This document shows positions 420 to 19,794 of a stretch of DNA of 64,000 bases, one piece after another. The DNA lies in the IMG/VR virus record IMGVR_UViG_3300027782_000027, positions 1-64,000 of that record. One strand, written 5' to 3'. The notes beneath the pieces were generated by a model, which saw nothing but the letters and a program-made list of their open reading frames with translations, did no database searches and had not been told where the DNA came from. Within the stretch, counting starts at the first letter, position 1; each line of letters starts with the position of its first letter. A program made the translations under genes and the position numbers.

Positions 420-451
420 ACCCCATTGAATTCGCTACTCAGTGGGGTTTT
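420..451 (+). terminator. intrinsic terminator
   Basis: ACCCCATTGA...TCAGTGGGGT stem followed by T run, between convergent genes. Confidence 0.7.
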
Positions 452-1235
452 CATTTAAGACATCTTCTACCACTGGTGAATTACATGTACGCGATGTGTG
501 TGTTGTAGTTACCTTATGATTTAGGACTTCTCCCACCTCACTGGGAACAATAGTGGGTCTACAATTGGTTTTAGTTACCTTATGATTTAATACCTTCTCC
601 ACCATATTCGGAAACGGCGGTGTATTGAATGATATTGTAGATACCTTATGATTTAATACATCTTCCACCTTTATTTCCAACTGAAAACAAGAATGACCTG
701 TTGTAGATACCTTATGATTTAATACATCTTCTACCTTATGTCCAACCCATCCATCATACCCATCAGTTGTAGATACCTTATGATTTAATACATCTTCCAC
801 CAAGAAACCTTCGTTACCGATATCGTTTTGCGTTGTGGATACCTTATGATTTAATACCTCTTCCATCTTCACACTTGCCTTCATGCCCATGTAAACAGTT
901 GTAGATACCTTATGATTTAATACCTCTTCCACCCCGCCTGTAATCATGGTCTGCGCCATGGCAGTTGTGGACACCTTATGATTTAATACCTCTTCCACCC
1001 AAGAAGCAAGTATTGGTTCAAAATCTTTGGGTTCCAATGAGAAAATAGTAAAAAAACTATTAAAGAAATAATATCTCCACCACAAACGACCACTCTTTTC
1101 AAATTCAAAATACCAATGTTCCTTTTCTCGGTCAATTAACCATATAGAATCTTTATATGGGATTATCTCCGTATTACCTAATTCTTTGTATAGTTGTTTG
1201 AATACGACCTGTTTTAATCTATCAGTTACTTTCAT
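435..1235 (-). CDS. repeat-array protein 1: N-terminal domain of about 80 aa plus (VEEVLNHKVSTT + unique 10 aa) x8
   Basis: ORF translation; paralog of 1222-1899, 1883-2521 and 9657-10385. Confidence 0.85.
   Translation of the reverse strand: MKVTDRLKQVVFKQLYKELGNTEIIPYKDSIWLIDREKEHWYFEFEKSGRLWWRYYFFNSFFTIFSLEPKDFEPILASWVEEVLNHKVSTTAMAQTMITGGVEEVLNHKVSTTVYMGMKASVKMEEVLNHKVSTTQNDIGNEGFLVEDVLNHKVSTTDGYDGWVGHKVEDVLNHKVSTTGHSCFQLEIKVEDVLNHKVSTISFNTPPFPNMVEKVLNHKVTKTNCRPTIVPSEVGEVLNHKVTTTHTSRTCNSPVVEDVLNENPTE
502..999. CRISPR. CRISPR-like array 1, in frame inside a CDS; 8 full 36-nt repeats plus a degenerate one ending at 471; 30-nt spacers
   Basis: Consensus GTTGTRGATACCTTATGATTTAATACMTCTTCCACC at 502, 568, 634, 700, 766, 832, 898, 964; exact 66-nt period; no cas genes in the window. 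Confidence 0.55.
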
Positions 1236-1899
1236 TTTCTTTTTTGTTGTTTAATACCTCATCTACCGATTCCGCTCTTCTTGAGATGTATTCTTCCGTT
1301 TTGGATACCTTACGATTCAATATATCTTCCACCAAAAAGTTTCCTTCACCTACGTCACGGACTGTTTTGGATACCTTACGATTCAATACCTGTTCCACCG
1401 CAATGGTTACAGTTCCTGCCTTTCCTGCAGTTGTGGATACCTTACTATTCAATACCTCTTCCATCATATCATTCGAAGTGAAACTGAATTGCTGAGTTGT
1501 GGATACCTTACTATTCAATACCTCTTCCACCCCTTGCTTAAAACTTCTGAAACGGCTTGCAGTTGTGGATACCTTACTATTCAATACCTCTTCCACCCCG
1601 CCATCCATGACATATTGAGTGCTGTCAGTTGTGGATACCTTACTATTCAATACCTCTTCCACCCAAGATGAAATAATTGGTTCAAAATCTTTGGACTCCA
1701 AAGAGAAAAAAGAAAAGAAAGATTTGAAATAATCATATCTCCAATATAAACATCCACTTTCAGTTAGTTGGAAATACCAGTATTTTTCTTCTCTATCAAT
1801 AAACCAATAACTGTATTGGGTAGGGATAATTTCCACATTACCTAATTCTTTGTATAGTTGTTTGAATACAACCTGTTTTAATCTATCCGTTACTTTCAT
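1222..1899 (-). CDS. repeat-array protein 2 (6 unique 10-aa cassettes)
   Basis: ORF translation; repeats VEEVLNSKVSTT. Confidence 0.85.
   Translation of the reverse strand: MKVTDRLKQVVFKQLYKELGNVEIIPTQYSYWFIDREEKYWYFQLTESGCLYWRYDYFKSFFSFFSLESKDFEPIISSWVEEVLNSKVSTTDSTQYVMDGGVEEVLNSKVSTTASRFRSFKQGVEEVLNSKVSTTQQFSFTSNDMMEEVLNSKVSTTAGKAGTVTIAVEQVLNRKVSKTVRDVGEGNFLVEDILNRKVSKTEEYISRRAESVDEVLNNKKENESN
1298..1663. CRISPR. CRISPR-like array 2, in frame; 6 full repeats plus a degenerate one ending at 1267
   Basis: GTTGTGGATACCTTACTATTCAATACCTCTTCCACC-type repeats at 1298, 1364, 1430, 1496, 1562, 1628; 30-nt unique spacers. Confidence 0.55.
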
Positions 1900-2521
1900 T
1901 TTCTTTTTTATTGTTTAATGCCTTTTTCACCCAAGCACTATTTAATACTTCTTCCACTGACCTTTCGGAAAACAAGGAATTATTTTTAGTTGTTGATACC
2001 CTACTATCTAATACTTTTTTTACCTTTCTTTTTTGGGCGGCGTCTACTTCAAAAGTTTCGGATACCTTATGATTTAAGACCTCTTCCACCCACTTTGCTG
2101 TTACAGTAGTTTTCTCTTCAGTTGTGGATACCTTATGATTTAATACCTCTTCCACCAGAGGAAATTCGTCAATTACAAACATTTTTGTTGTGGATACCTT
2201 ATGATTTAATACCTCTTCCACCTTTCGCGAGAAGTAACCGAGCTTATTGCCTGTCGTGGATACCTTATGATTTAATACCTCTTCCACCCAAGAAGATATT
2301 ATTGGTTCAAACTCACTCTGTTCCAAAGAAAAAATGCTGAAAAACGATGGGAAGAATGAGTATCTCCAAAATAAACATCCATCTTTAGACAACTGAAAAT
2401 ACCAATAACAATTTTCCCTATCAATGAACCATACAGAGTCTTTATACGGGATTATCTCCACATTACCTAACTCTTTGTATAGGTGTTTGAATATGAGTTG
2501 TTTTAGCTTATCTGTAACCAT
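1883..2521 (-). CDS. repeat-array protein 3 (5 unique cassettes); start moved to ATG at 2521
   Basis: ORF translation; TATCTTTG element just upstream of the ATG; start matches paralogs. Confidence 0.85.
   Translation of the reverse strand: MVTDKLKQLIFKHLYKELGNVEIIPYKDSVWFIDRENCYWYFQLSKDGCLFWRYSFFPSFFSIFSLEQSEFEPIISSWVEEVLNHKVSTTGNKLGYFSRKVEEVLNHKVSTTKMFVIDEFPLVEEVLNHKVSTTEEKTTVTAKWVEEVLNHKVSETFEVDAAQKRKVKKVLDSRVSTTKNNSLFSERSVEEVLNSAWVKKALNNKKENESNG
1989..2288. CRISPR. CRISPR-like array 3, in frame; 5 repeats plus a degenerate one ending at 1958
   Basis: Repeats at 1989, 2055, 2121, 2187, 2253; 66-nt period. Confidence 0.55.
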
Positions 2522-3112: not shown

Positions 3113-3451
3113 TTAATTTTCAGACGGTAATTTTAACGACCATTGGGAGCTCATTATCTTGTTGGACATTTGACCCTCCAAATTTAGTTTATTCTTAACC
3201 CATTGCCCAACAATTCTGGTGGATTGATAACTGTTAAGAGAAAAGAAGGAAGAAATGGCTTCAATTAAACCTTTATAGATAAAACACAATTCATTATTGG
3301 AATGATTACCACCATATTGAATTTGAGCTGACTCATCTTCAGGATATGAAAAATATATACTGGCACCAGTTTTAGTTATAATGAAATCCTGACTATCAAG
3401 ATACCTGAATATTACTTTATCTAATTGTGATTCTGTGATTAAATATTTCAT
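3113..3451 (-). CDS. MKYLITE-family small protein
   Basis: MKYLITESQLDKVIFRYLD...FFSL...WV paralog family. Confidence 0.8.
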   Translation of the reverse strand: MKYLITESQLDKVIFRYLDSQDFIITKTGASIYFSYPEDESAQIQYGGNHSNNELCFIYKGLIEAISSFFSLNSYQSTRIVGQWVKNKLNLEGQMSNKIMSSQWSLKLPSEN

Positions 3452-3819
3452 GATAATGTTATACTTCTAACTGATTTAACCTCATAGTCAGGAAAGAACT
3501 CATTAAATACATCTGACATAATGAATTTGCCGTGAACTAACCAAATGGGATGAGGAAACGCTGTACCATATATATCGTCAAAGTTCCTATTATAGTATAA
3601 ATCGCCACTTGGTTTATTATAAACCATTACAGCGTTTTGGTCACTATCAAATAAGTTAAGTCTTAAATCATTTTCATCATATGAATTAACCAAATTTGCA
3701 AAATAAGGAACCAATTTAGGTTTCAGTCTTTCGTATTGTTCCGTATATTCAGAATCTCTCCAAGTTCTTTCAAGTTCAGATATTAATTTATGTTGTGACT
3801 CGGTAATAATATACTTCAT
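3448..3819 (-). CDS. MKYIITE-leader small protein
   Basis: shared leader; upstream TATTTAT motif. Confidence 0.8.
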   Translation of the reverse strand: MKYIITESQHKLISELERTWRDSEYTEQYERLKPKLVPYFANLVNSYDENDLRLNLFDSDQNAVMVYNKPSGDLYYNRNFDDIYGTAFPHPIWLVHGKFIMSDVFNEFFPDYEVKSVRSITLS

Positions 3820-3851
3820 GTAATAATAAATATAATTATATTTATTATATT

Positions 3852-4175
3852 ATGAACCTACAAGAGAATATAAAAAAAGTATTAAGGGAAGAAACAGATT
3901 TTTCACCACAGTTCAAAAGAAGACTGAATAGATTTAAATCGTTTGTATGGGATAACAATGTAACTAATTATCCATGTGATTTTGAAAACTTTGAAGCGTT
4001 CATGCGTGGTATACAACATGAAATTATGGACATGATTACAGATGGTTCTGATACCGATGGTCCATTGTCTGAGTGGTTAAAATATAAAGATGGTGTTACG
4101 TATGTAGAAAACTACATGAGGGATGACTTAGAAAAGTTTTATAATAAAGAATGTGTTGATGTCTTATACGTATAA
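3852..4175 (+). CDS. MNLQENIKKVLREE-leader small protein
   Basis: leader shared with 5643 and 9201. Confidence 0.8.
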   Translation: MNLQENIKKVLREETDFSPQFKRRLNRFKSFVWDNNVTNYPCDFENFEAFMRGIQHEIMDMITDGSDTDGPLSEWLKYKDGVTYVENYMRDDLEKFYNKECVDVLYV

Positions 4176-4520
4176 ATCAAGAAATTGTTCCACTGTTATT
4201 CCAAGACCTGAGATACCAAATAAATTCATAAATTCAGATTCATCATATCTATCACATCCGTTATTGATAATCCAAGGAATATCTGTAACATAATTCATCT
4301 GATAAAGTATATCATAACTATTATCTAATTTTATAAGATACATCGGACCATAGTTATCCATACTAAGTCTTCTTCGTAAACCATCATCAGTAATACAGTT
4401 ATCAAAAGACATCATTACATCAATCAAATCTGGGTCAATCTCCACACGACCCGTAAGGTCAATATTAAATTTGTCTTTAATTAATGTTTTTAATTTTGAT
4501 TCAGTGATTAAGTATTTCAT
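4164..4520 (-). CDS. MKYLITE-leader small protein
   Basis: shared leader. Confidence 0.8.
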   Translation of the reverse strand: MKYLITESKLKTLIKDKFNIDLTGRVEIDPDLIDVMMSFDNCITDDGLRRRLSMDNYGPMYLIKLDNSYDILYQMNYVTDIPWIINNGCDRYDESEFMNLFGISGLGITVEQFLDLYV

Positions 4521-4536
4521 TATATATAAATATTAG

Positions 4537-4947
4537 TTAACAGTTACCTGTATTATAAACCTCAATATTGTGACCTCTAATTAGACCTCCACCGAACTGA
4601 TATAAAGCCTTAGCAATAGTATCTCTATACACACTCCTATTACCTTCTTCATACATATACCTCCCCACATTTTCAGGTTCCGGCTTAGGTATGTAGACAA
4701 CCAAATCCATAGAGTTACGAGTGGGGATGATATTATAACTACAATATCTTAAGACGGTTGAAATATCATTTTCAAATATAGTTTTTGTTAGAAAGATAAT
4801 ATCTTCTCTTTTTCCTTCAAGACCAATCTCATCAATAATATCTTCAGGTTCCTTATCAGTCATTTTACACAGAGTACGCATACCAAATTTCTCTAATAAG
4901 GGTTTAAGAGTTTTGCTATATTGATTCTCAGTGATTAAGTATTTCAT
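4537..4947 (-). CDS. MKYLITE-leader small protein
   Basis: shared leader. Confidence 0.8.
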   Translation of the reverse strand: MKYLITENQYSKTLKPLLEKFGMRTLCKMTDKEPEDIIDEIGLEGKREDIIFLTKTIFENDISTVLRYCSYNIIPTRNSMDLVVYIPKPEPENVGRYMYEEGNRSVYRDTIAKALYQFGGGLIRGHNIEVYNTGNC

Positions 4948-4955
4948 ATATTATA

Positions 4956-5285
4956 TTAGTTATTTACTCTTATCCATACATTCGGTGCGGGTTTAGCCCC
5001 ACGGACTTGTACAACTATTACTTTGAGGGTATTTTCAACCCATCTACGGATAAGTTCCATGGAATCGGAGATACCCAAAGAAAAGAAAGAGGCCACTTCA
5101 TTAATTAAACTATTAACAATGTAACACCAGCCACTAATTTTATCATATCTAATCTCAGCGTATTCATCATCTTCTAAATTAACTAAAAATATAGTTGCAC
5201 CCTTTTTAATCTGAATAAAGTTCTTAATATCCAAATATCTAAAGATTACTCTGTCTAATTGTGATTCGGTGATAAGGTATTTCAT
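4956..5285 (-). CDS. MKYLITE-family small protein
   Basis: close paralog of 8520-8816. Confidence 0.8.
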   Translation of the reverse strand: MKYLITESQLDRVIFRYLDIKNFIQIKKGATIFLVNLEDDEYAEIRYDKISGWCYIVNSLINEVASFFSLGISDSMELIRRWVENTLKVIVVQVRGAKPAPNVWIRVNN

Positions 5286-5288
5286 ATA

Positions 5289-5609
5289 TTAATATTCAAA
5301 AAACATAACATCAACATCAAATACTTTACTAAACCAATCAGAAATGAATTTACCTGATTGCTCTTTATCAAGTGGATACATGGATGAAAACTTATCTAAA
5401 AAAGATTCATCAATAAATAATCTACCATCACTATGGTCAAACTCCATTAAAATAAAAAAATCAGGGCCTCTTTCCTGGCTATATATATTAATGAAATCAC
5501 TATCTGATGTTCTATCATAATCTAATATATTATTTAACTCAGATATCATTAAATTATTTATTACCGATTTGGCTTTATCTAATTGTGATTCGGTGATAAG
5601 ATATTTCAT
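5289..5609 (-). CDS. MKYLITE-leader small protein (start moved to 5609)
   Basis: shared leader begins at codon 8 of the track ORF. Confidence 0.8.
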   Translation of the reverse strand: MKYLITESQLDKAKSVINNLMISELNNILDYDRTSDSDFINIYSQERGPDFFILMEFDHSDGRLFIDESFLDKFSSMYPLDKEQSGKFISDWFSKVFDVDVMFFEY

Positions 5610-5642
5610 ATAGAATATAAATATAATCATATTTATAATAAT

Positions 5643-5972
5643 ATGGACTTAAAAGAATCTATAAAAAGAATACTGAGGGAAGAACTATCGGCGAGAATTA
5701 AAAGAAGACTTTCTAATGATGAAATGGAAAATGAGTTTCTTGAATCTTTTGAAGGTGCTTATCGTCTTACAAAAGACAGAAAGGTTTTAAGTTCACATTT
5801 TTTAGATGAGTTAGTCTACACAACAATAACCTTTATGATGGATGGGGTACATTGGAGATTTGTTAGCACATTACCTGAAGATGAATTTTGGTATGATGAT
5901 ATACACCAAGGGTTAGAAAATCATTATAGAAAAAGAATTACACGGATGTATAATGAAAGAAAAGGTTTTTAA
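5643..5972 (+). CDS. MDLKESIKRILREE-leader small protein
   Basis: shared leader; similar to 3852-4175. Confidence 0.8.
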   Translation: MDLKESIKRILREELSARIKRRLSNDEMENEFLESFEGAYRLTKDRKVLSSHFLDELVYTTITFMMDGVHWRFVSTLPEDEFWYDDIHQGLENHYRKRITRMYNERKGF

Positions 5973-5975
5973 AGA

Positions 5976-6254
5976 TTAATTAGAGTTTAAGAATTTAAGT
6001 AACGCTCCAATATATTTGGAACGTTTATCATAGAATTCAGTATCATCATCATATTGAAAAAACTCTTCACCTCTATGTCTATCAATGAACTTTTCAATTA
6101 ATTCATAAGCGTAATCATCTCTGTCGGCGGAATCTTCAAAATCTTCTTCATCCATAATGTAGTTATAATCATCCCTAAGTGCTTCCAATTCATCCATTGT
6201 AAACCTCCTAAGTAAAAATACTTCTAACTGTGATTCTGTAATTAAGTATTTCAT
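5976..6254 (-). CDS. MKYLITE-leader acidic small protein
   Basis: shared leader. Confidence 0.8.
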   Translation of the reverse strand: MKYLITESQLEVFLLRRFTMDELEALRDDYNYIMDEEDFEDSADRDDYAYELIEKFIDRHRGEEFFQYDDDTEFYDKRSKYIGALLKFLNSN

Positions 6255-6267
6255 TATTCGTTAACCA

Positions 6268-6621
6268 TTAATCTGTAACTATTAATCTGTAATCATATGG
6301 ACCATCCCAAATCGTACTATTACTAATACCCAAAGTATTATTAACCCATTCTTTGATTATATCCAAACAATCCGATTTACCAATGGGTAATAAGGTAGAT
6401 AAATCCTCAGTCAAACTACGATTTACAAACACCCAATTCCTAACTTCACCAAAGGCGTTGTTAACATAAACACTAATCTGTGATTGACTATCTGACTCAC
6501 TGTTTAAGAAATATATATAATTGTTGAATCTCTTCTTGTTGTCATATATCACAAAGTCCTGAATATCAAGATACTTAAAGATTACTTTCTCTAATTTTGA
6601 TTCGGTGATAAGGTATTTCAT
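6268..6621 (-). CDS. MKYLITE-family small protein
   Basis: paralog family motif. Confidence 0.8.
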   Translation of the reverse strand: MKYLITESKLEKVIFKYLDIQDFVIYDNKKRFNNYIYFLNSESDSQSQISVYVNNAFGEVRNWVFVNRSLTEDLSTLLPIGKSDCLDIIKEWVNNTLGISNSTIWDGPYDYRLIVTD

Positions 6622-6633
6622 TATATATAAATA

Positions 6634-7002
6634 TTAGTTAAGGGGTATTCCCAATAACGAATGAATAAGGATGTCTTTGTTAGACGGTATTTTTAACCAA
6701 GACTGGGACATCAAAGTAGCCTTGGTGGTATTTGTAACCTTCATTTGTAGGGTATTCCCAACCCACCTACCAATAGCTGATTTAGAATCAGATTCGTCCA
6801 AAGAAAATAACGATGAGATGTTCTTGATTAATTCGGGACTTATTACACAACCAAAATTACCATTTTTGATTTGAGCATATTCATCATCTTCAGAGTTAAC
6901 GAAGTATACTAAAAGACCTATTTTAATTTGAATAAAATCTTGATGGTTCAAGTAAATAAAGATTGCTCTATCTAATTGTGATTCTGTAATTAAGTATTTC
7001 AT
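6634..7002 (-). CDS. MKYLITE-family small protein (start moved to 7002)
   Basis: leader begins at codon 15 of the track ORF. Confidence 0.8.
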   Translation of the reverse strand: MKYLITESQLDRAIFIYLNHQDFIQIKIGLLVYFVNSEDDEYAQIKNGNFGCVISPELIKNISSLFSLDESDSKSAIGRWVGNTLQMKVTNTTKATLMSQSWLKIPSNKDILIHSLLGIPLN

Positions 7003-7109
7003 TATATATAAATACAAAGATACACATAAAACTGAACAATACATATTGGGTTAATAATTTAATAAGAATAAGATAATATGGTTTGAGGTCGTTTTTAATA
7101 CTTATTATT

Positions 7110-7817
7110 ATGGATTTATCAAAGTTTTTAACCATAGTAATCCCTTGTAAGAACGAGGGCAAGATAATTGAACAAACGTTGTCCTTATTAAACTTTCAAA
7201 AGGGAATACAAGATGTTAGAGTTATTGTTTGTGATTCATCGGATGATGATTATACATCCTATTCTTTGGAAAATAGGAGAACAGATTATTTTAATCTACA
7301 GATTATTTCAGGAGGACTTCCGTCTGTTGCAAGAAATAAGGGAGCAGAGAATGTGGAAACACCTTATGTTCTATTTTTGGATGCTGACATATTCTTATTG
7401 GATTTTGACATATTAAACAATTGTATATGGGAGTTCTTATTACATAATACAGATTTGATTACATGTAAGGTAAGGTCAACGACAGGTGAGTATAATAGTA
7501 TATTCAGATTGTTTGACACCATACAAAAGGTATTTAAACCAATCACGCCATTTTGTCTTGGTGGGTTTATGATGGTTAAGAAAGAAGTATATGATACAAT
7601 CGGCGGGTTTGATGAAAACGCAAGAGTTGCTGAGGATTATCTATTCTCCAAACAAGTTAAACCAAGTAAGTTTTATATCATGAATACAACAGTATTCACA
7701 AGTCCAAGAAGGTTCAAACAGAAAGGTGTGTGGTATATGTTAAAACTTATGGTTAGTTCATTCTTCAACAGGAACAATAAAAATCATTTTGAGGATGATA
7801 AAGGATACTGGGAATGA
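7110..7817 (+). CDS. glycosyltransferase family 2
   Basis: IVIPCKNE, ARNKGA, LFLDAD (DxD) and GGFDE...ED motifs. Confidence 0.9.
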   Translation: MDLSKFLTIVIPCKNEGKIIEQTLSLLNFQKGIQDVRVIVCDSSDDDYTSYSLENRRTDYFNLQIISGGLPSVARNKGAENVETPYVLFLDADIFLLDFDILNNCIWEFLLHNTDLITCKVRSTTGEYNSIFRLFDTIQKVFKPITPFCLGGFMMVKKEVYDTIGGFDENARVAEDYLFSKQVKPSKFYIMNTTVFTSPRRFKQKGVWYMLKLMVSSFFNRNNKNHFEDDKGYWE

Positions 7818-8527
7818 ATAATTGGAAAACGATAATCATGAGTGACTTACACTTAGGAGCGAGACAATCACAGACAGATAAGATAATAAGTTTCTTGGAT
7901 AATAACACAACGGAAAAACTAATACTGAACGGTGATATAATAGATGGTTGGGCTCTCAAAGGTAATGGTAAATGGACAAAGGATTGTACCAAGATATTCA
8001 GGAAGTTCATGAAGATGTCCGAGAAGAATACAAAGGTAATTTATATAAGAGGAAACCATGATGACTTCTTAAAAGATTTTATTCCATTTAAATTAAACAA
8101 CATCAGGATTGTAAGGAAGTATGTTCATACAGGGATAGATAATAGAAAGTATTTTTGTTTTCACGGAGATGTATTGGATTTTGTTATAATGGAAGCAAGA
8201 TGGCTTGCAGTAATCGGTGGATGGTCATATGATATTGTCATTAAGTTTAATACTCTATATAACAAAATAAGAAAGTGGTTTAACTTACCATATCATTCAT
8301 TAGCTAACACAATAAAACAATCTGTAAAAGGGGCGATTAACTTTGTATCTGATTTTGAGGATAACGCGAAAGGTTTAACAAAACAAAAGGGATATGATGT
8401 TGCGGTGTGTGGACATATTCATCACCCGAAGATAGAGAATGACTATATGAACTCAGGAGACTTTTGTGAGAACTCTACATGTCTTGTAGAAGATTACAAT
8501 GGGGTGTGGAAAATAATTACTATCTAA
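7814..8527 (+). CDS. UDP-2,3-diacylglucosamine hydrolase-like (LpxH family) metallophosphoesterase
   Basis: SDLHLG, GDIID, GNHD, HGD, GHIH, NSGDF calcineurin-like motifs; translationally coupled to the GT2 gene. Confidence 0.85.
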   Translation: MNNWKTIIMSDLHLGARQSQTDKIISFLDNNTTEKLILNGDIIDGWALKGNGKWTKDCTKIFRKFMKMSEKNTKVIYIRGNHDDFLKDFIPFKLNNIRIVRKYVHTGIDNRKYFCFHGDVLDFVIMEARWLAVIGGWSYDIVIKFNTLYNKIRKWFNLPYHSLANTIKQSVKGAINFVSDFEDNAKGLTKQKGYDVAVCGHIHHPKIENDYMNSGDFCENSTCLVEDYNGVWKIITI

Positions 8528-8816
8528 CTATAACTTCTTTAACTCTTCTATCCAAAGTATTCTCAACCCATCTAGCAATAACATATTTAGAATTATCAAA
8601 TTCTATAGAGAAGAAATCTTTAATCTCATCAATTAACCCAAAAATTATTACACACTCACCACCTCTAAAGTATTCGATTGATGAGTCGATATATTCACCA
8701 CCTTCAGAATTGGCGAAGTAAATTGCACTCCCTCTTTTAATCTGAATAAAGTTCTTAATATCCAAATATCTAAAGATTACTCTATCTAATTGTGATTCTG
8801 TTATAAGGTATTTCAT
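8520..8816 (-). CDS. MKYLITE-family small protein
   Basis: paralog family motif. Confidence 0.8.
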   Translation of the reverse strand: MKYLITESQLDRVIFRYLDIKNFIQIKRGSAIYFANSEGGEYIDSSIEYFRGGECVIIFGLIDEIKDFFSIEFDNSKYVIARWVENTLDRRVKEVIVR

Positions 8817-8832
8817 TATATATAAATATTAG

Positions 8833-9168
8833 TTAGAAGGGTAACCTCAATGTCAAACTTCCACTGTTTGTAATGGACATTGATTTTTCGTAACTGTATT
8901 TTACTTGTAATGTATCACCAATCCATCGAACAATAATCTTCTCAGAATCAGAATCACTCAAAGAAAATAATGATGAAATATCGTCAACTAATTCATAATT
9001 CATAAAAGAAAAATTATCACTCATATCGTATCTGATTTGACAATACTTATCACCTTCTGAATTAACAAAGTATATAGTGTCTTTATCCTCAACCTGAATA
9101 AAATCTTGATTGTCAAGATACCTAAAGATTACTTTTTCTAATTTAGATTCTGTGATAAGATATTTCAT
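8833..9168 (-). CDS. MKYLITE-family small protein
   Basis: paralog family motif. Confidence 0.8.
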   Translation of the reverse strand: MKYLITESKLEKVIFRYLDNQDFIQVEDKDTIYFVNSEGDKYCQIRYDMSDNFSFMNYELVDDISSLFSLSDSDSEKIIVRWIGDTLQVKYSYEKSMSITNSGSLTLRLPF

Positions 9169-9200
9169 ATGATAATAAATATAATTATATTTATAATATT

Positions 9201-9656
9201 ATGAACCTACAACAAAACATAAAAAGAATATTAAGGGAAGAATACACCGTAAAACAGATGAAGTTATTAACTATCGCAAGTCAGGTGGGGTTACTAAAGA
9301 CAGGAGAAATGTTCGGTGGTATAGAATACCTTATAAATGTGTTAGGTGATGAGTTCCTTACAACAAACAATAAGGTTAAGATTATTAGGGAAGTAGTAGA
9401 AACAACCGATTATGAATATATCACACTAATGGATATGAATGAAAACCCAATAGTTCTCAAGGTTGGAGACGGTAAACTTTCACAAATAGAAATGATAAAT
9501 AAAGAAGATGTTACAGTGTTCCATTATGGTGGATATGAATACTCACAAGATTTAGGTGAAAGTTATATATCTTATGAAGAACTACCAAAAGATGTATTAG
9601 ATGATATCTTTAATATGGTATTAGATTTCTATACAGATACTTTAGAGAATAAGTAA
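9201..9656 (+). CDS. MNLQQNIKRILREE-leader protein
   Basis: shared leader. Confidence 0.8.
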   Translation: MNLQQNIKRILREEYTVKQMKLLTIASQVGLLKTGEMFGGIEYLINVLGDEFLTTNNKVKIIREVVETTDYEYITLMDMNENPIVLKVGDGKLSQIEMINKEDVTVFHYGGYEYSQDLGESYISYEELPKDVLDDIFNMVLDFYTDTLENK

Positions 9657-10385
9657 TTATTGATTTAAGACCTGTTCCATCACATAATTCATTACAGACA
9701 TTTCTACATCCGTTGTACATACCTTATTATTTAATACCTCTTCCACTCCTCTTGTGAAAGGTCCAGAATATGCTTCCATTGTAGATACCTTATGATTTAA
9801 TACCTCTTCTACCTCAATTCTTCCAACGTAATCAAGTGAATCGGTTGTGGATACCTTATGATTTAAGACCTCTTCCACCAATGAATGTTCGGGGTATTTG
9901 AGAATGGTAGTTGTAGACACCTTAACATTATGACTTAATACATCTTCCACCTTCCAAGGAACACGAACTTTAACATCGCACGTTGTGGATACCTTATGAT
10001 TTAATACATCTTCCACCATCATGCTTTCAACACCGCTACCTGTCACGGTTGTGGATACCTTATGATTTAAGACCTCTTCCACCACGTAGTTCCTAAGCCC
10101 TATAGGGCGATATGTTGCGGATACCTTATGATTTAAGACCTCTTCCACCCAAGAAGATAGAACAGGACAAAAATCATCCGAACTCATGGAGAATATTTGA
10201 AAAAACGAATTAAAAAAATCGTATCTCCACCATAAAGTACCTGACTCATCAAGTTCAAAGTACCAATGTTTATTATCCCTATTAATGAACCATATAGACC
10301 CATTATAAGGAATAATCTCACAATCACCTAACTCTCTATATAGGTGTTTAAAAATAATTTGTTTTAATCTATCTGTAATAACCAT
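9657..10385 (-). CDS. repeat-array protein 4 (7 unique cassettes)
   Basis: paralog of 435-1235; TATATTTG element just upstream of the ATG. Confidence 0.85.
   Translation of the reverse strand: MVITDRLKQIIFKHLYRELGDCEIIPYNGSIWFINRDNKHWYFELDESGTLWWRYDFFNSFFQIFSMSSDDFCPVLSSWVEEVLNHKVSATYRPIGLRNYVVEEVLNHKVSTTVTGSGVESMMVEDVLNHKVSTTCDVKVRVPWKVEDVLSHNVKVSTTTILKYPEHSLVEEVLNHKVSTTDSLDYVGRIEVEEVLNHKVSTMEAYSGPFTRGVEEVLNNKVCTTDVEMSVMNYVMEQVLNQ
9712..10149. CRISPR. CRISPR-like array 4, in frame; 7 repeats (one with a 6-nt insertion) plus a degenerate one ending at 9681
   Basis: Repeats at 9712, 9778, 9844, 9910 (42 nt), 9982, 10048, 10114; all spacers 30 nt. Confidence 0.55.
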
Positions 10386-11198
10386 AGAGCAAATATAGTA
10401 AGAAATTATGAACTAAACAAACTCATTCCCCCATTCCACTATCGTGTCGTTCCATTCCCCTAGCGGGTCATTACACTAATGGGTTCATTCATTTGTTTAC
10501 TTCTTAATTTCCCCTATTGTATGAATCTATAATTAACGTACAACACTAATCTATAATAATCCCCCATAATGAAAGACATATAGTATGAGGGGACATAACA
10601 TATTACTGTTAATGGTATTGTACCCATCGGGATAATGAAATACCCTAAAGGGTATATAATATGATATGAGTATACCTGTTAGGGTATAAAATATATGGTG
10701 GAATGTGAAGGGGACAATGTCCTTTATAGGGAACATAACCCTACAGGGTTATCCCTTATATAACACATTATGTCCCACTTTTTACCACCACTATAATTGT
10801 CCATATCATGTGTCTATATGGTAAGGGGAAATCTTAAAAACCTCATTATATTCGGGTCAAGAACCCCGTTGAAGACACTATAAAATACACTTTTCGTTGA
10901 AGGATTTAAACAACTAAAGTCTGTCCACGCCACTTTATTGTTACATCCTATTTTTAGCTGGAAAATGTATATAGTTAAAAAAACCCTTCTCACACTATCA
11001 GGAGGACCACTTTTTTCACTTTTCATATAACCAAAAACCCCTCTCACATATATGTCAGTGGTAAAAAGTGGGAAATAAAAACTTAACATAAACTATACAT
11101 TATACCATATATTTATTATGATTATTAGGTCTAAAAGTGGTCAAGGGGATTATCCCCCATCTGACACTCAACTGACATTTTGACAAAATCAAGAAAAA

Positions 11199-14241: not shown

Positions 14242-14739
14242 ATGAAAAAAGTTGTAAGATTAACAGAGTCGGATTTAACAAGAATTGTTAAACGAGTAAT
14301 AAATGAGAAAAAAGAAATGATTCGTATTACGGGTGATTATAGTGGGGCTAAACATGTACTTGGTAGTTCTGCATCTCCTGAAGATATTATGGATGAATAT
14401 AATAATGCAGTTGAAGAGGGAACACCTCTTGTTAGTTATTCTGATGGTGTGTTCTATAATCAGGATGATAAAGAGATTCCTGTAGACGTTGTTTTGGATG
14501 AATTGAATTATGCAATTCTTGGTTATGAAGAAGAAGATTATGATGATATGGGGGATTCTCCAAAACAAAAAAGATTTGGTGATGGTAATGAAAATGAAAT
14601 GTATTTAACCGATAATGTAAGGTTCCACCGTAAAGGGGGGAGGTTAACTTTAAGTTACACTCCGACTAAGACTATGGGAGGACTTACTATATCTGATAAA
14701 CAGAAGAAGATGTTAATTGATTTTTTAAACAGGAATTAA
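14242..14739 (+). CDS. MKKVVRLTESDL-leader protein
   Basis: shared leader; internal domain shared with 17769-18362. Confidence 0.8.
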   Translation: MKKVVRLTESDLTRIVKRVINEKKEMIRITGDYSGAKHVLGSSASPEDIMDEYNNAVEEGTPLVSYSDGVFYNQDDKEIPVDVVLDELNYAILGYEEEDYDDMGDSPKQKRFGDGNENEMYLTDNVRFHRKGGRLTLSYTPTKTMGGLTISDKQKKMLIDFLNRN

Positions 14740-14767
14740 CCTCTCCAATGATAGTATTGTTGGACCG

Positions 14768-14794
14768 ACCCCTTCTTCAACGGAGGGGTTTTTT
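14768..14794 (+). terminator. intrinsic terminator
   Basis: ACCCCTTC...GGAGGGGT stem plus T run. Confidence 0.75.
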
Positions 14795-14823
14795 ATTTCA
14801 TTTTTTTTTCTTATTATTAATAT

Positions 14824-15066
14824 ATGGAAGAAGAGAAATTATCAGTTACTGTGGATGTAACATTAAAGGACAATAAGTTTTTTTATAACATAATGGCCAT
14901 GAAGGGTATGAATATGGATGATATTATGTCTGTATTGTGTGGAGGTCTTGCTTTATCTATTCGTAGTAGGGAAACCCCTGAGTTACAGGGTCAGACTCTT
15001 AGGGATATTATTGGTCATTTGGAATCTGAGTTTATTAATGTGGATTCATTTTCTGACGTTAAATAA
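14824..15066 (+). CDS. hypothetical protein
   Basis: 80-aa ORF. Confidence 0.7.
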   Translation: MEEEKLSVTVDVTLKDNKFFYNIMAMKGMNMDDIMSVLCGGLALSIRSRETPELQGQTLRDIIGHLESEFINVDSFSDVK

Positions 15067-15115
15067 TTTTTTGGAAAATTAAGATTATTGTTTTATCTTT
15101 GTAAAAAAAATATAT

Positions 15116-15616
15116 ATGGAACCTGAAGAAGAAAATATTGGTATGATGAATATTTTAGGAGATAATGTTTTGTTAACAAGGGATTATGGTAATTATACTA
15201 TAACTAATGGAGGAATGACTGTTAATCCGTATCTTGATAATGATTATCGTGTTTCTTCAATGAACAACAGAACGTATAATAAAGATGGTGAATTTGTTTT
15301 TCCTGAGATGTTATTCAAGGTTCTTAAGAAGAGTTTACCTGGTATTCATTCAATTGTTATTAATAAGTTTGAAACTAAATTTACATATACTGTTGATAGT
15401 TTTGAATCTACCCCAAAGTACTTGGTATTTGTTGATGTTATATACAATTGGGATTCAAGTGAGGTGTTATCTCCTGAGAAGTTGGGTGATAAAATCAACA
15501 TGTCATTTCCTATGATATATACTGATGTTAAGTTTGTCACCTTTAGTGTAAATACCGTTAAGGTTGAGAGACGTGATTACGAGAAAGAGTTTATGAATAT
15601 CTTTGGTAAAAAATAA
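15116..15616 (+). CDS. hypothetical protein
   Basis: 166-aa ORF; TATCTTTG upstream. Confidence 0.75.
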   Translation: MEPEEENIGMMNILGDNVLLTRDYGNYTITNGGMTVNPYLDNDYRVSSMNNRTYNKDGEFVFPEMLFKVLKKSLPGIHSIVINKFETKFTYTVDSFESTPKYLVFVDVIYNWDSSEVLSPEKLGDKINMSFPMIYTDVKFVTFSVNTVKVERRDYEKEFMNIFGKK

Positions 15617-15635
15617 TTTTTTTCTTCGTTGTTCC

Positions 15636-15658
15636 AATCCCCCCTACCCCCTTTTTTG
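15636..15658 (+). repeat. dispersed intergenic element AATCCCCC(C)TACCCCCTTTTTT (other copies at 16089, 16513, 20849)
   Basis: four near-identical copies, each just after a stop codon and before TATTTAT. Confidence 0.85.
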
Positions 15659-15679
15659 TTTTGATGTATTTATTGTAAT

Positions 15680-16072
15680 ATGAAATACCAAATCACAAAG
15701 GAACAATATTCTAAACTTGTCTATAAGTTAATTGAAGCATTTTTTAAGGATGTTAAATTTTACAAAGATGATGGTGGGGGTTATTTGACTTATGATATTA
15801 CTGTTGATGGTGAGGATGTTGCTTATATTCACACGAAAAAAAGTCCTCATATAGCTAAGGGATGTGAATATGAACTTGTAATATATGACGATACTATATT
15901 AAAGATAACAGACTTTGTTCCGATTTTTAGGAAGAAGGTATTCTCAAAAATACTCATTAAATATTTTTCTGATATTACTGGCGAAGATATTGATTGTATT
16001 AATTTTGATATGAAACATCCTGGAAGTGATGATACAATTATATATACAAAAAAATTCAAAAAGAAAAAATAA
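15680..16072 (+). CDS. MKYQITKEQ-leader protein
   Basis: variant of the MKYLITE leader. Confidence 0.75.
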   Translation: MKYQITKEQYSKLVYKLIEAFFKDVKFYKDDGGGYLTYDITVDGEDVAYIHTKKSPHIAKGCEYELVIYDDTILKITDFVPIFRKKVFSKILIKYFSDITGEDIDCINFDMKHPGSDDTIIYTKKFKKKK

Positions 16073-16133
16073 TTTTTTTTCGTCGTTCAATCCCCCCTAC
16101 CCCCTTTTTTGTTTTTAGATATTTATATATAAT

Positions 16134-16514
16134 ATGAATACAACAGAACAAGAGCTTAAAGAAATACTTGATTATCAAATTGAGACAATAATAAGAAAGG
16201 GAACAACATATGAATTTCAAATCATTGACTCACCATCAATTTTTATTGATGGGGAAAGTTTTTTATCTCGCACAAATACCGTATCTATAATTAGGGAACA
16301 TCAATTAACCTCAAAATTTAATTCTATAAGAGAAGAATTTGTGAGCCGAGATGAATACGAAACGGTTGATTTTATATTAACGTCCATGGAATTTATTTTA
16401 ACATTCTTGGAGGAACATAAAGGTAAAAGGATATTTATTATGGGTGAGTCATTTAATTCTGGACCAAATCCTTTTTTTGTGAGAACTAAAACTATTAGAG
16501 CAATAGTGGTTTAA
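16134..16514 (+). CDS. hypothetical protein
   Basis: 126-aa ORF. Confidence 0.7.
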   Translation: MNTTEQELKEILDYQIETIIRKGTTYEFQIIDSPSIFIDGESFLSRTNTVSIIREHQLTSKFNSIREEFVSRDEYETVDFILTSMEFILTFLEEHKGKRIFIMGESFNSGPNPFFVRTKTIRAIVV

Positions 16515-16553
16515 TCCCCCTACCCCCTTTTTTGTTTTTGGATACTTATTTAT

Positions 16554-16745
16554 ATGAAAGAATTTTTAAAATATCTTATCATATGGATTGCTGAGAATCT
16601 ATCTATTCCATTTTGGGTTGTTGGTCATGTCCATCTATCACTTAATGTTTATAACGACATTTATGAGGTTATTGCATCTTTTGGAATGAACATAATTGTT
16701 GGTGTAGGTTTTTATTTTGGTTGGAAAGAATCTTTAAAGAAATAA
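16554..16745 (+). CDS. small membrane protein
   Basis: two hydrophobic segments. Confidence 0.65.
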   Translation: MKEFLKYLIIWIAENLSIPFWVVGHVHLSLNVYNDIYEVIASFGMNIIVGVGFYFGWKESLKK

Positions 16746-16774
16746 AATTTGAGTATTTATAATAAAAAACTATT

Positions 16775-16951
16775 ATGAAAAAATTATTAATTATCTTATC
16801 TATTGGTTTGTTTAGTTGTGGGTCATTAAAGAGTTCATCATGTTGTGATACTCATAAGGATTGTGTTAAACAGACTGAGTGTTGTGGTATGGACCACTGT
16901 GATAAAAATCATTGTGAGGGAAATTGTTGTGATTCATCTTGTTGTAGATAA
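16775..16951 (+). CDS. Cys-rich small lipoprotein (not in the ORF track)
   Basis: MKKLLIILSIGLFSC lipobox, then 11 more Cys in 43 aa; TATTTAT upstream, terminator downstream. Confidence 0.7.
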   Translation: MKKLLIILSIGLFSCGSLKSSSCCDTHKDCVKQTECCGMDHCDKNHCEGNCCDSSCCR

Positions 16952-17033
16952 TCTGATAATTTTATTATCTTAAACCCCTTTTTAAACGGAGGGGTTTTTT
17001 ATTTGTGTAGTATATTTATAATAAAATATTAAT

Positions 17034-17687
17034 ATGAAAAAAGTTGTAAGACTAACCGAGTCTGATTTGGTTAAAATAGTTAAAAGAGTTATTAGTGAAC
17101 AGACACAACCAAAAAAATTTAGAATTGGTACAACAACTTACCAAATACAAAAGATAACACCTGTTGATAATATGTGGAATCAATTAGAGTATGTAAAAGT
17201 ACTATCTAATGGAATGATGGAAAAGAGATTAATTACGGGATTTGTTAAAAATGGTAATTCTAAATTTATTTATCAAACTAAAAATGATAAATCCCAAAAG
17301 ATGGGGCCATCTGATATCGAATTAGTTGTTGGACAAAATAAACCTGATAATAAACCACAGACTCAATCACAACCTACGGTTAGTCAAAAGGACATTAATG
17401 AACTTAAAAATTTTTATAAAAACTTAACGGATTATCTAAATGACTTTTCAGGAGAGTATAAAACAAAACCTGAGAATTCTACCGAAAGTAATAAAATAAA
17501 TTTTAAATTATTTAGTAGTGAAAACATAAATGTTGGAGGATTAGTTACTTTGTCTTCAGAGTCTGGTAAAATAAAAGTATTGTTTGGTGGTAGACCTATA
17601 TACGATACTGAGCCAAATGACCCAAGAGGTATTGTTTTAACATCTAAACGTTTAGTAAAAGAATTGTTTAAACAACAAAATTACTAA
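17034..17687 (+). CDS. MKKVVRLTESDL-leader protein
   Basis: shared leader. Confidence 0.8.
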   Translation: MKKVVRLTESDLVKIVKRVISEQTQPKKFRIGTTTYQIQKITPVDNMWNQLEYVKVLSNGMMEKRLITGFVKNGNSKFIYQTKNDKSQKMGPSDIELVVGQNKPDNKPQTQSQPTVSQKDINELKNFYKNLTDYLNDFSGEYKTKPENSTESNKINFKLFSSENINVGGLVTLSSESGKIKVLFGGRPIYDTEPNDPRGIVLTSKRLVKELFKQQNY

Positions 17688-17705
17688 ACCAATATTGAGT
17701 TATAC

Positions 17706-17733
17706 AACCCCATTCTTATGAGTGGGGTTTTTT
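17706..17733 (+). terminator. intrinsic terminator
   Basis: AACCCCATTC TTAT GAGTGGGGTT plus T run. Confidence 0.8.
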
Positions 17734-17768
17734 ATTTTATGATATATTTATATATAAATTAAAATATT

Positions 17769-18362
17769 ATGAAAAAAGTTGTAAGATTAACAGAATCAGA
17801 TTTAATTAGAATTGTTAAAAGAGTTATTAAAGAAGAAACTTCCCCAAAAGAAAAAGGAAAAGATTTATACACATTATTACATTCATTGAGGAATTCAATT
17901 AACGATGAAGATAAGAAAGAAGCGTTATCTAAACTTGAGGATGTATTTTCTATTGTTAGAGACATGGATGATAAAGATAAACCAAAACGTAAGGTTAATG
18001 AAAATAGACATGAAGAAAAAGATATTTTCATATCTAAAGGTTTTAAGGGAGTTAGAATGGAATTTGGAGGTGAATCGGCATCACCAAGTGATATTATTGA
18101 GTTATATAATGATTATGTTGAAGAGGGTACCCCGTTGGTGAAATATCTTGGACGTGATATCTTTTTGAATGTTAATGATGAGGAGGTTGATAAGTATATT
18201 GTTCTTGACGAATTGAACTATGCCATTCTTGGTGAAGAAGATGAAGAAGAAGATTATGATGATGAGGAAGAAGAGCAAGATGATGATAATAATCGTCAAA
18301 GCTTTGATGATACCGGTAGACATCTTGGATGGTTTAATCCCAAACGTTTGAATGATATGTAA
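17769..18362 (+). CDS. MKKVVRLTESDL-leader acidic protein
   Basis: shared leader; domain shared with 14242. Confidence 0.8.
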   Translation: MKKVVRLTESDLIRIVKRVIKEETSPKEKGKDLYTLLHSLRNSINDEDKKEALSKLEDVFSIVRDMDDKDKPKRKVNENRHEEKDIFISKGFKGVRMEFGGESASPSDIIELYNDYVEEGTPLVKYLGRDIFLNVNDEEVDKYIVLDELNYAILGEEDEEEDYDDEEEEQDDDNNRQSFDDTGRHLGWFNPKRLNDM

Positions 18363-18463
18363 AACAATATTTCTAAATAAAATTAAAACTCCTTATTTTT
18401 TAAGGAGTTTTTTATTTTTTAATATATTTATAGTAAACATAAAAAAAATAAAAATTAAACATT

Positions 18464-18661
18464 ATGAAAAAAATTAGATTATCAGAAAGAGAATTAACTA
18501 ATATTATTAAAAAAGTTATCCGCGAGGGTGTTTATATTACAATCCCAATAGAGGGTGAACATGACGGAGTAAAATATACAATACAATTCCCTGACGGTTC
18601 AGGAAACCCTGGAACTTTAACATACGGTGAGGAAACATATACTTTAACTGAATTAAAATAA
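18464..18661 (+). CDS. MKKIRLSEREL-leader small protein
   Basis: shared leader. Confidence 0.75.
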   Translation: MKKIRLSERELTNIIKKVIREGVYITIPIEGEHDGVKYTIQFPDGSGNPGTLTYGEETYTLTELK

Positions 18662-18668
18662 AATTATT

Positions 18669-19052
18669 ATGAGAAATATTGAGGCATATAAGAACAGATT
18701 TTATAACTTGATGGAATCAACTATTGGTAATGTAAAACCATTAATTAGTGAACAAGAGGAAACTGAACCACAAATTTTTGACAAAAATTATTTTATTACA
18801 AAAAAAACGGGCACATTATCTTTGAATGATAATAGTATAGTTAACAAAATAGATGATGTTGAATTAACAGATGCTGGAAGTCAATTCTATGATAGTTTTG
18901 AAAGACAAAATTTTGGTGGAAGAGGGAGCTCATCGGGAGACTACCAATGGTCATACGGGGATACCCTTGACATTGGAATTAACGGAGCTCCTGGACAACC
19001 AGGTATTTCGATAAGTCAAAATGGAACCGAATTAGGTACAATGATATTTTAA
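18669..19052 (+). CDS. MRNIE..RF.NLMES-leader protein
   Basis: leader shared with 20895. Confidence 0.75.
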   Translation: MRNIEAYKNRFYNLMESTIGNVKPLISEQEETEPQIFDKNYFITKKTGTLSLNDNSIVNKIDDVELTDAGSQFYDSFERQNFGGRGSSSGDYQWSYGDTLDIGINGAPGQPGISISQNGTELGTMIF

Positions 19053-19779: not shown

Positions 19780-19794
19780 AGTATTTATTGTAAT

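What the first reader, a model, noticed from the sequence alone, without database searches (positions are those of the whole stretch)
3113..9168. Array proteins appear to derive from the neighbouring MKYLITE paralog family, whose members end in a single variable tail
Seen: 3113, 4956, 6268, 6634, 8520 and 8833 align with the array-protein domain. Examples: LITESKLEKVIFKYL vs VITDRLKQIIFKHL, and FSLDESDSKSAIGRWVGNTLQMKVTNTT vs FSLEQSEFEPIISSWVEEVLNHKVSTT. After the WV..L..KV element each has an unrelated short tail. Inference: the repeat evolved from coding sequence at a position already tolerant of variable peptides, so the domain may be a display scaffold. This also keeps alive the alternative that CRISPR resemblance arose secondarily.
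Basis: partly seen in the sequence, partly recalled or inferred. Interest (0 to 1): 0.6.

Follow-up and report, generated by a model that had tools for sequence, protein, structure and literature searches.

The report
Translated CRISPR-like arrays in a phage
A freshwater jumbo phage carries four genes in which a small folded protein domain runs, in frame, into an array that looks and grows like a Cas13b-type CRISPR array yet is kept readable as protein, a combination I have not found described.

Summary
The ~79-residue N domain of the four "array proteins" is homologous to the neighbouring MKYLITE paralogs: hhalign 95.5%, E 1.4e-8; still E 1e-5 without the repeat-like element. AlphaFold gives both the same helix, four strands, two helices order.

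The "display scaffold" reading is too narrow. At DNA level the arrays behave like CRISPR arrays:
- Units are strictly 36 + 30 nt, and the boundaries are not codon-aligned.
- Rare codons are fixed in the repeat across 18 lineages.
- New units appear next to the N domain; distal units are shared and decayed.
- One metagenome variant has exactly one extra proximal unit with a duplicated first repeat.

The repeat is 23-24/36 identical, in the same orientation, to the Flavobacterium columnare 36-nt/30-nt repeat that I take to be its Cas13b (VI-B) array. A pattern built from both picked out the only Cas13b genome among ~300-400 Bacteroidota.

The frame is also kept open: 1 stop in 1290 spacer codons against 45-110 in other frames, and spacer pN/pS is 0.28.

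No cas gene, anti-repeat or protospacer was found. The function is not settled.

The parts
435..1235 (-). Array gene A1 (266 aa). N domain is codons 1-79 (999-1235). Then 8 units of 36-nt repeat + 30-nt spacer and a degenerate terminal repeat (435-999).
   Evidence: ORF; unit dissection; AlphaFold model; orthologous arrays.
1222..1899 (-). Array gene A2 (225 aa). N domain 1663-1899; 6 spacers. Its stop overlaps the start of A1 by 14 nt.
1883..2521 (-). Array gene A3 (212 aa from the ATG at 2521). N domain 2288-2521; 5 regular spacers and a decayed end. Its stop overlaps the start of A2.
   Evidence: At least 1475 database clusters are related to it.
9657..10385 (-). Array gene A4 (242 aa). N domain 10149-10385; 7 spacers, one irregular 72-nt unit.
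3113..3451 (-). MKYLITE paralog B1 (112 aa): single domain plus tail.
4956..5285 (-). MKYLITE paralog B2 (109 aa).
6268..6621 (-). MKYLITE paralog B3 (117 aa).
6634..7002 (-). MKYLITE paralog B4 (122 aa from the MKYLITE start). Its WVGNTLQMKVTNT codons are 23/36 identical to the F. columnare VI-B repeat.
   Evidence: (AlphaFold pLDDT 84.6).
8520..8816 (-). MKYLITE paralog B5 (98 aa, short tail).
8833..9168 (-). MKYLITE paralog B6 (111 aa). It is the best single-sequence match to the array N domain.
   Evidence: E 1.4e-4; E 5e-5.
5289..5609 (-). More distant MKYLITE-superfamily member (ends ...DWFSKVFDVDV...).
   Evidence: Found by the B-family HMM; sits in the outer group of the tree.

Best explanation
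The four 'array proteins' are orphan CRISPR arrays of the Cas13b (type VI-B) kind, fused in frame to a small MKYLITE-family domain gene and read through as protein.

Shown:
- Each gene is a folded domain of ~79 residues followed by strict 66-nt units: a 36-nt repeat and a 30-nt unique insert.
- The first repeat supplies the last turn of helix 3 and the following strand of the domain.
- New units enter next to the domain and duplicate the first repeat. Old units drift to the 3' end and decay.
- The repeat is conserved as nucleotides and resembles repeats that sit beside cas13b.
- The reading frame through all inserts is kept open.

Inferred:
- Units are added by a host CRISPR integrase. The likeliest is the type II-C Cas1-Cas2, which serves VI-B arrays in trans in Flavobacterium.
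- The transcript can be bound or processed by host Cas13b.
- The arrays therefore act in the conflict with host CRISPR-Cas, as decoy crRNAs or a spacer sink, or less likely as phage-chosen guides.
- Translation either protects and couples the long operon transcript, or yields a functional domain with a disordered tail. Inserts that carry stops are purged.
For: Architecture:
- 295 repeats in this phage and 33 related viral contigs, almost all spaced exactly 66 nt.
- In the logo, repeat columns 1-35 and column 66 are conserved; columns 36-65 carry no information. The unit is therefore 36 + 30 nt and its boundary is not codon-aligned.

Nucleotide-level constraint:
- GTG is used 18/18 times (genome-wide use 7%), GAG 17/17 (17%) and AAG 15/15 (22%) across lineages. 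Equally conserved residues of the N domain use mixed codons.

Growth:
- The fraction of private spacers is 0.43 at unit 1 and 0.16 at unit 5.
- Shared spacers are collinear in 434 of 460 array pairs.
- Contig L120 equals the L119 array, which differs from this window's A1 at an internal unit, plus one extra unit directly after the domain. Its second repeat carries the variant specific to the first repeat.
- Pairwise spacer identity is bimodal: 23-28 of 29, or 17 or fewer, with nothing between. Inserts are therefore new sequence, not diverged duplicates.

Type VI-B link:
- The repeat is 23-24/36 identical to the F. columnare CRISPR-2 repeat; 0 of 100,000 shuffles reach that.
- Repeat length, spacer length, the leader-distal GTTGT motif and the leader-to-array transcription direction agree with PMC8092290.
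- A pattern of the shared positions found one true array in 401 Bacteroidota genomes. That genome, G131, was the only one with Cas13b (NF038190, 820.9 bits) in the overlapping 301-genome draw later searched for Cas13b.

Coding:
- 1 in-frame stop in 1290 spacer codons, against 45-110 in the five other frames.
- Spacer pN/pS is 0.28, against 0.21 for the N domain.
- Codon-position bias exceeds what a stop filter alone produces.
- Stop and start codons of the three tandem genes overlap.
Against: - No cas1, cas13b or reverse transcriptase in this phage (estimated 82% complete), and no cas1 or cas13b in five related records, two of them complete.
- No anti-repeat above the shuffled level.
- No protospacer for any spacer in the phage itself, in GenBank phages, or for the two (IMG/VR) and one (JGI metagenomes) exact 25-mers tried.
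- No bacterial array with this repeat. The exact 19-mer gave only single chance hits in 185,579 species genomes, and a pattern with up to 3 mismatches gave none in 401 Bacteroidota.
- The host is unknown.
- The repeat is only about 65% identical to known VI-B repeats. Its middle is recoded and its predicted hairpin is weaker. Some lineages lose the outer stem.
- pN/pS rests on 25 differences.
- No RNA data exist.
Confidence: 0.6

Rival explanations
1. Purely protein-level reading. The repeat is a duplicated helix-strand module of the MKYLITE domain, and the 10-mers are displayed or variable peptides under diversifying selection. The CRISPR likeness is convergent and has no link to Cas proteins.
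For: - The frame is open and spacer pN/pS is below 1.
- The N domain is homologous to array-less paralogs whose C-terminal element aligns with the repeat peptide.
- AlphaFold docks one distal unit back onto the domain at pLDDT ~75.
- No cas genes or protospacers were found.
Against: - It does not explain the fixed rare codons or the conserved G that lies outside the codon register.
- It does not explain exact 36 + 30 nt units, or polar gain of unrelated 30-nt inserts with duplication of the first repeat.
- It does not explain the 23-24/36 identity to Cas13b-type repeats.
- The array part is predicted disordered, and the 10-mers show no positional preference.
Confidence: 0.15
2. Ordinary non-coding phage mini-CRISPR array or RNA anti-CRISPR. 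The long ORFs are an accident of a 66-nt period and a stop-free repeat; no protein is made.
For: - Phage-borne orphan arrays and repeat mimics are known (PMC10651486, listed).
- The repeat resembles VI-B repeats.
Against: - 1 stop in 1290 in-frame spacer codons, against 45-110 in each other frame. Detection was at DNA level, not ORF-based.
- Native VI-B repeats contain a stop in this frame, and the phage repeat is recoded there.
- The 'leader' is a conserved folded domain with pN/pS 0.21.
- Array ends coincide with conserved stop contexts, and starts and stops overlap.
Confidence: 0.07
3. Multi-core precursor or polyprotein. The conserved 12-mer is a recognition or cleavage site, for example for the phage's T4-type prohead protease at V-E-E, and the 10-mers are released as peptides.
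For: - The architecture is a leader domain plus repeated conserved motifs flanking hypervariable cores.
- A Peptidase_S77 prohead protease is encoded at contig position 66,655-67,089.
- The candidate capsid protein has an I-N-E|A site.
Against: - No maturation enzymes were identified, and the neighbours were not scanned.
- V at P3 is not the canonical L/I, from my knowledge of T4 gp21.
- This reading does not explain the DNA-level CRISPR behaviour. At best it adds to the main explanation.
Confidence: 0.08

Closest known systems
Type VI-B (Cas13b) CRISPR arrays of Bacteroidota, which receive spacers in trans from type II-C Cas1-Cas2 (F. columnare; PMC8092290)
   Same: - 36-nt repeat and 30-nt spacer.
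- Repeat 23-24/36 identical to the F. columnare repeat.
- GTTGT at the leader-distal end; transcription runs from leader to array.
- Polar gain with duplication of the first repeat; decayed distal repeats.
- No cas1/cas2 in cis.
   Different: - The arrays lie in a phage with no cas13b.
- The whole array is an open reading frame continuous with a folded domain.
- The middle of the repeat is recoded, removing a stop and weakening the inner stem.
- No protospacers are known.
Phage-encoded orphan mini-arrays and RNA anti-CRISPRs (solitary repeat units; PMC10651486)
   Same: A virus carries repeats that resemble host CRISPR repeats without any effector gene. The plausible role is to subvert host Cas proteins.
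   Different: - Here there are 5-9 units per array and 3-4 arrays per genome.
- Spacer turnover is active.
- There is strong selection for translation.
Neo-CRISPR arrays from off-target spacer integration (Nivala et al. 2018, as cited in bioRxiv 10.1101/148544)
   Same: An array can be seeded at a repeat-like sequence outside a canonical locus. This is a possible origin at the 3' end of an MKYLITE gene.
   Different: - Those arrays were seen in E. coli over-expressing Cas1-Cas2.
- They are not coding, not on a phage, and not maintained over years.
MKYLITE small-protein superfamily of these phages (uncharacterised; no Pfam or PHROG family)
   Same: The N domain is homologous and has the same predicted helix, four strands, two helices order. 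Both share a WV..L..KV C-terminal element.
   Different: - Array proteins start MKVTD/MVITD instead of MKYLITES.
- They carry arrays instead of one ~15-residue tail.
Multi-core RiPP precursors such as cyanobactin PatE (from my own knowledge)
   Same: A leader followed by conserved flanking motifs around short hypervariable cores.
   Different: - No modification enzymes are known here.
- Variation arises by polar unit insertion at DNA level.

Membership tests
CRISPR array (generic) | Fixed-length direct repeats separated by unique spacers of fixed length | tested here: met
   36 + 30 nt. 295 repeats, almost all spaced 66 nt. Boundaries are sharp at nucleotide level.
CRISPR array (generic) | Polar spacer gain at the leader end with duplication of the first repeat; conserved and decayed distal end | tested here: met
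   Gradient of private spacers and collinearity. L120 has one extra proximal unit that carries the first-repeat variant. Distal repeats are degenerate.
CRISPR array (generic) | Spacers match foreign nucleic acids (protospacers) | tested here: inconclusive
   No match in the phage's own genome or related loci, in GenBank phages, in IMG/VR for two exact 25-mers, or in JGI metagenomes for one exact 25-mer, where all 5 hits were arrays. Only a few spacers were searched, and only as exact matches.
CRISPR array (generic) | cas genes in cis or in the same genome | tested here: not met
   No Cas1 and no Cas13b. Nothing found in PADLOC or Pfam for the large ORFs.
CRISPR array (generic) | Transcribed and processed into crRNAs | not testable with these tools
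   All 20 runs that hold the locus are DNA contigs.
Type VI-B (Cas13b) array | Repeat sequence of the VI-B repeat family | tested here: met
   23-24/36 identical to the F. columnare repeat (0 of 100,000 shuffles) and 20-21/36 to the F. branchiophilum repeat. The shared-position pattern found only the genome with Cas13b among those sampled. The 23/36 match to the G131 repeat is partly by construction of that pattern.
Type VI-B (Cas13b) array | Two-tier hairpin of the direct repeat | tested here: inconclusive
   An outer stem plus a short inner stem is predicted, as in VI-B repeats. It is weaker (z -1.2 to -2.2) and shifted. No covariation was seen, and some lineages lose the stem.
Type VI-B (Cas13b) array | Adjacent cas13b | tested here: not met
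MKYLITE paralog family | Significant profile similarity over the whole domain | tested here: met
MKYLITE paralog family | Same predicted fold | tested here: met
   Same order and lengths of helices and strands. The two models were not superposed. Neither has a PDB match.
MKYLITE paralog family | MKY[LI]ITES N-terminus | tested here: not met
   Array proteins start MKVTDRLKQ or MVITDRLKQ.
Diversity-generating retroelement target | Reverse transcriptase and a template repeat | tested here: not met
   No RVT_1. Spacers have no second copy in the genome.
RiPP multi-core precursor | Dedicated maturation enzymes nearby | not tested
   The neighbouring small ORFs were not scanned one by one.

The most novel reading that the evidence does not exclude
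A CRISPR array that is also a gene. Host adaptation machinery writes 30-nt inserts into a phage array, and each surviving insert becomes ten residues of a phage protein. The same units would then be under both RNA/DNA-level and peptide-level selection. The array-less MKYLITE paralogs would be single-repeat versions: coding solitary repeat units aimed at Cas13b.
Probability: 0.3. Interest if true: 0.9.

Novelty: new variant of a known kind. Interest (0 to 1): 0.8.

Why it matters
- If phage genes can host working CRISPR-type arrays in frame, CRISPR adaptation can edit protein-coding sequence in nature.
- Phages of Bacteroidota would then have a so far undescribed way to engage type VI-B/II-C systems.
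- The family is abundant: at least 1475 sequence clusters, found in lakes sampled from 2017 to 2025.
- It gives a concrete, testable system for Cas13b counter-defence and for in-trans spacer integration.
- It also warns that array finders and gene callers each see only half of such loci.

Tried and rejected
- Pfam and PHROGs gave nothing on all ten proteins. PADLOC, run only on A4, B6 and seven large ORFs, gave nothing.
- Rfam found no CRISPR-DR or other family in the arrays.
- Fold searches gave no meaningful match: Foldseek best E 1.1; VIA best Z 4.4.
- The protein atlas returned only unnamed phage clusters at 0.83 or less.
- tblastn of an array protein against GenBank phages found nothing.
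- The genome-contig scan with the 5' half of the repeat gave 46 single chance hits in unrelated genes.
- A strict repeat pattern found none in 401 Bacteroidota genomes.
- Protospacer searches found none.
- A search for a tracrRNA-like anti-repeat stayed at the shuffled level.
- Duplication followed by hypermutation as the source of spacers is rejected, because no pair has intermediate similarity.
- DGR is rejected because there is no reverse transcriptase.
- Laying contigs of four lake runs showed unitigs that break at the repeats. They gave only alternative spacers at the same junctions, and no RNA.
- An early lead from memory, that the PspCas13b repeat shares GTGGAAG, is out of register and was dropped.
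Full report
**Context.** The window is the first 64 kb of a 240,759-bp viral contig, estimated 82% complete. It is found in freshwater lake metagenomes from 2017 to 2025, in 17 studies.
- It encodes a T4-type large terminase, at best 27-29% identical to huge uncultured phages and to a Flavobacterium phage.
- It also encodes a T4-type prohead protease, a tail sheath, a family-B DNA polymerase and an SprB-repeat protein. It is therefore a jumbo myophage, probably of a Bacteroidota host.
- No alternative genetic code was needed.

**The observation.** The six MKYLITES ORFs and the four array genes are as described. Homology between the two sets is solid:
- hhalign gives 95.5% probability, E 1.4e-8, over 87 columns.
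- Reciprocal HMM searches link the two sets.
- After removing the WV..L..KV/repeat element from both alignments, hhalign still gives E 1e-5. The reversed control gives 0.36.
- AlphaFold2 models have the same layout. The paralog at 6637-7002 (pLDDT 84.6) has H7-20, four strands, H56-65 and H70-85. The array protein at 438-1235 has H5-18, four strands, H56-63 and H69-85, at pLDDT about 85.
- Neither model has a recognisable PDB relative.
- In a quick tree, all array N domains form one group (SH-aLRT 93) beside two groups of array-less proteins. The array architecture therefore arose once within this superfamily. The tree is unrooted, so the direction is an inference from parsimony.
- By my reading of alignment A3 (no script count), the tails of the paralogs are variable, but about half end in a shared [LI][KR][IVL]P motif.

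**What the arrays are at DNA level.**
- Repeats are spaced exactly 66 nt in this phage and in 33 related viral contigs.
- A logo over 144 distinct units shows conserved columns 1-35, no information in columns 36-65, and a conserved G in column 66. The true unit is a 36-nt repeat beginning with the last base of the Trp codon, plus a 30-nt insert. The boundary ignores codons.
- Across 18 lineages whose N domains fall to about 45% identity, the repeat keeps rare codons: GTG 18/18, GAG 17/17, AAG 15/15. Genome-wide use of these codons is 7%, 17% and 22%. Conserved residues of the N domain use mixed synonymous codons.
- Spacer pairs are either near-identical (23-28 of 29) or at background (17 or fewer). 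New inserts are therefore unrelated sequence, not diverged duplicates.
- Orthologous arrays share their distal units and differ near the domain.
- In 100 distinct arrays from the protein database, the private fraction falls from 0.43 at unit 1 to 0.16 at unit 5. Shared units are collinear in 434 of 460 pairs.
- A metagenome contig (L120) carries the L119 array (which differs from this window's A1 at an internal unit) plus exactly one extra unit directly after the domain. Its second repeat has the polymorphism otherwise specific to the first repeat. This is the footprint of CRISPR-type integration.
- Several spacer variants coexist at one junction within single lake samples.

**Link to Cas13b arrays.**
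- Table 4 of PMC5395568 lists the F. columnare CRISPR-2 repeat: 36 nt, with 30-nt spacers. I take it to be the VI-B array, because PMC8092290 reports one II-C and one VI-B array in this species and CRISPR-1 lies beside cas9 and cas1.
- The phage repeat is 23-24/36 identical to it, ungapped and in the same orientation; 0 of 100,000 shuffles reach that. It is 20-21/36 identical to the F. branchiophilum repeat.
- PMC8092290 reports that F. columnare II-C and VI-B repeats are both 36 bp and share GTGTT-type similarity at the leader-distal end, namely GTTGT. VI-B is transcribed from leader to array. VI-B lacks cas1/cas2 and acquires spacers through the II-C machinery.
- The phage arrays match in repeat length, spacer length, end motif and orientation, taking the N-domain gene as the leader.
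- A degenerate pattern of the positions shared by the phage and F. columnare repeats found one real array among 401 sampled Bacteroidota genomes. That genome, G131, has a Cas13b gene directly beside the array (NF038190, 820.9 bits). It is the only Cas13b carrier among 301 sampled genomes.
- Native VI-B repeats contain a stop in the phage reading frame. The phage repeat keeps VI-B-like ends and has a recoded middle.
- Its predicted hairpin has the same two tiers but is weaker.
- The array-less paralogs also have VI-B-like codons at WV.NTLQMKVTNT: up to 23/36, in a register one base later. The 99.9th percentile for other parts of the same genes is 21. These genes are related to one another, so this counts as few independent observations.

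**Evidence that the arrays are read as protein.**
- Detection at DNA level, with no ORF filter, gives 1 in-frame stop in 1290 spacer codons, against 45-110 in each of the other five frames.
- Spacers show G1/A2/T3 codon-position bias beyond a simulated stop filter. Their amino-acid composition differs from random (chi-square 66.7, 19 df).
- Differences among orthologous spacers give pN/pS 0.28 (12 synonymous, 13 non-synonymous), similar to 0.21 for the N domain. The sample is small.
- The three tandem genes overlap stop to start.
- The array part is predicted disordered.
- 252 distinct 10-mers show no positional preference except the NNG-constrained last codon.

**What is missing.**
- No Cas1, Cas13b or reverse transcriptase in this phage, and no Cas1 or Cas13b in five relatives, two of them complete.
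- No anti-repeat.
- No protospacers.
- No bacterial array with this exact repeat.
- No RNA data.

**Interpretation.** The best-supported reading is an orphan VI-B-type CRISPR array fused in frame to an MKYLITE-family gene.
- Shown: the arrays grow by CRISPR-style polar integration. Both the repeat nucleotides and the open frame are under selection.
- Inferred: the enzyme is the host II-C Cas1-Cas2, and host Cas13b binds the transcripts. The role would be interference with host CRISPR-Cas, as a decoy crRNA or a spacer sink, or as phage-chosen guides.
- Translation may prevent premature termination across about 2 kb of arrays, or may give a functional protein.
- Two origins remain possible. The array may have been seeded at a repeat-like 3' end of the gene, as with neo-CRISPR arrays. 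Or a captured array may have been recoded to complete the domain.

**Novelty.** Searches of the paper library found phage mini-arrays and RNA anti-CRISPRs, but nothing on in-frame, translated arrays. The family has no Pfam or PHROG entry and only 'hypothetical protein' names.

Noticed in passing
window 3113-9656, 14242-27607 and others; prohead protease at contig 66,655-67,089 (outside the window): Many unrelated small proteins share one of a few N-terminal signatures: MKY[LI]ITE-S (14 ORFs), MKKxVRLTE-SDL (7), MNLQExIKKxLRE-E (3) and MRNIE (2). Each contains an (L/I)xE motif. The phage has a T4 gp21-type prohead protease, and its candidate capsid protein has an I-N-E|A site. These may be T4-like capsid-targeting or cleaved propeptides of injected internal proteins. 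The array proteins lack the motif.
   Followed up: partly
window 50464-50856 (-) and 47205-47279 (+): The phage encodes a tmRNA (Rfam 130.5 bits; tag AKLSTLGLIRTEEVSVA) and a tRNA-Arg(TCT). A phage tmRNA could matter if host Cas13b cuts mRNAs and strands ribosomes. That link is speculation.
   Followed up: no
window 435-1235, residues 217-241 of the A1 model: AlphaFold docks one old distal unit (spacer NCRPTIVPSE plus the next repeat) back onto the N domain at pLDDT about 75. The rest of the array is below 30. The TIVPSE stretch resembles the LKIPSN tail motif of the paralogs, so it may be a remnant of the ancestral tail.
   Followed up: no
window 10386-11198: About 800 nt upstream of array gene A4 lack any convincing ORF and have higher G+C. 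The stretch is 70-100% conserved in close relatives only. A TAtaTTTG box lies just before the A4 start.
   Followed up: partly
window 61794-63122 (+): Between the terminase and the portal gene lies a 442-aa ORF with a long Thr/Pro-rich tandem repeat (TPTNT/TPSITP units of 18-72 nt).
   Followed up: no
window 3448-3819 and locus L024:4306-5001: In one relative, a B-type paralog and the next MKYIITE gene are fused into a single 231-aa ORF. This shows how plastic the cluster is.
   Followed up: no
loci L038:6471-6992, L039:6842-7477, L039:11193-11594, L050:1236-1574: Some members of the array clade have decayed or nearly absent arrays (0-1.5 recognisable repeats). Arrays can therefore be lost as well as gained.
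   Followed up: partly
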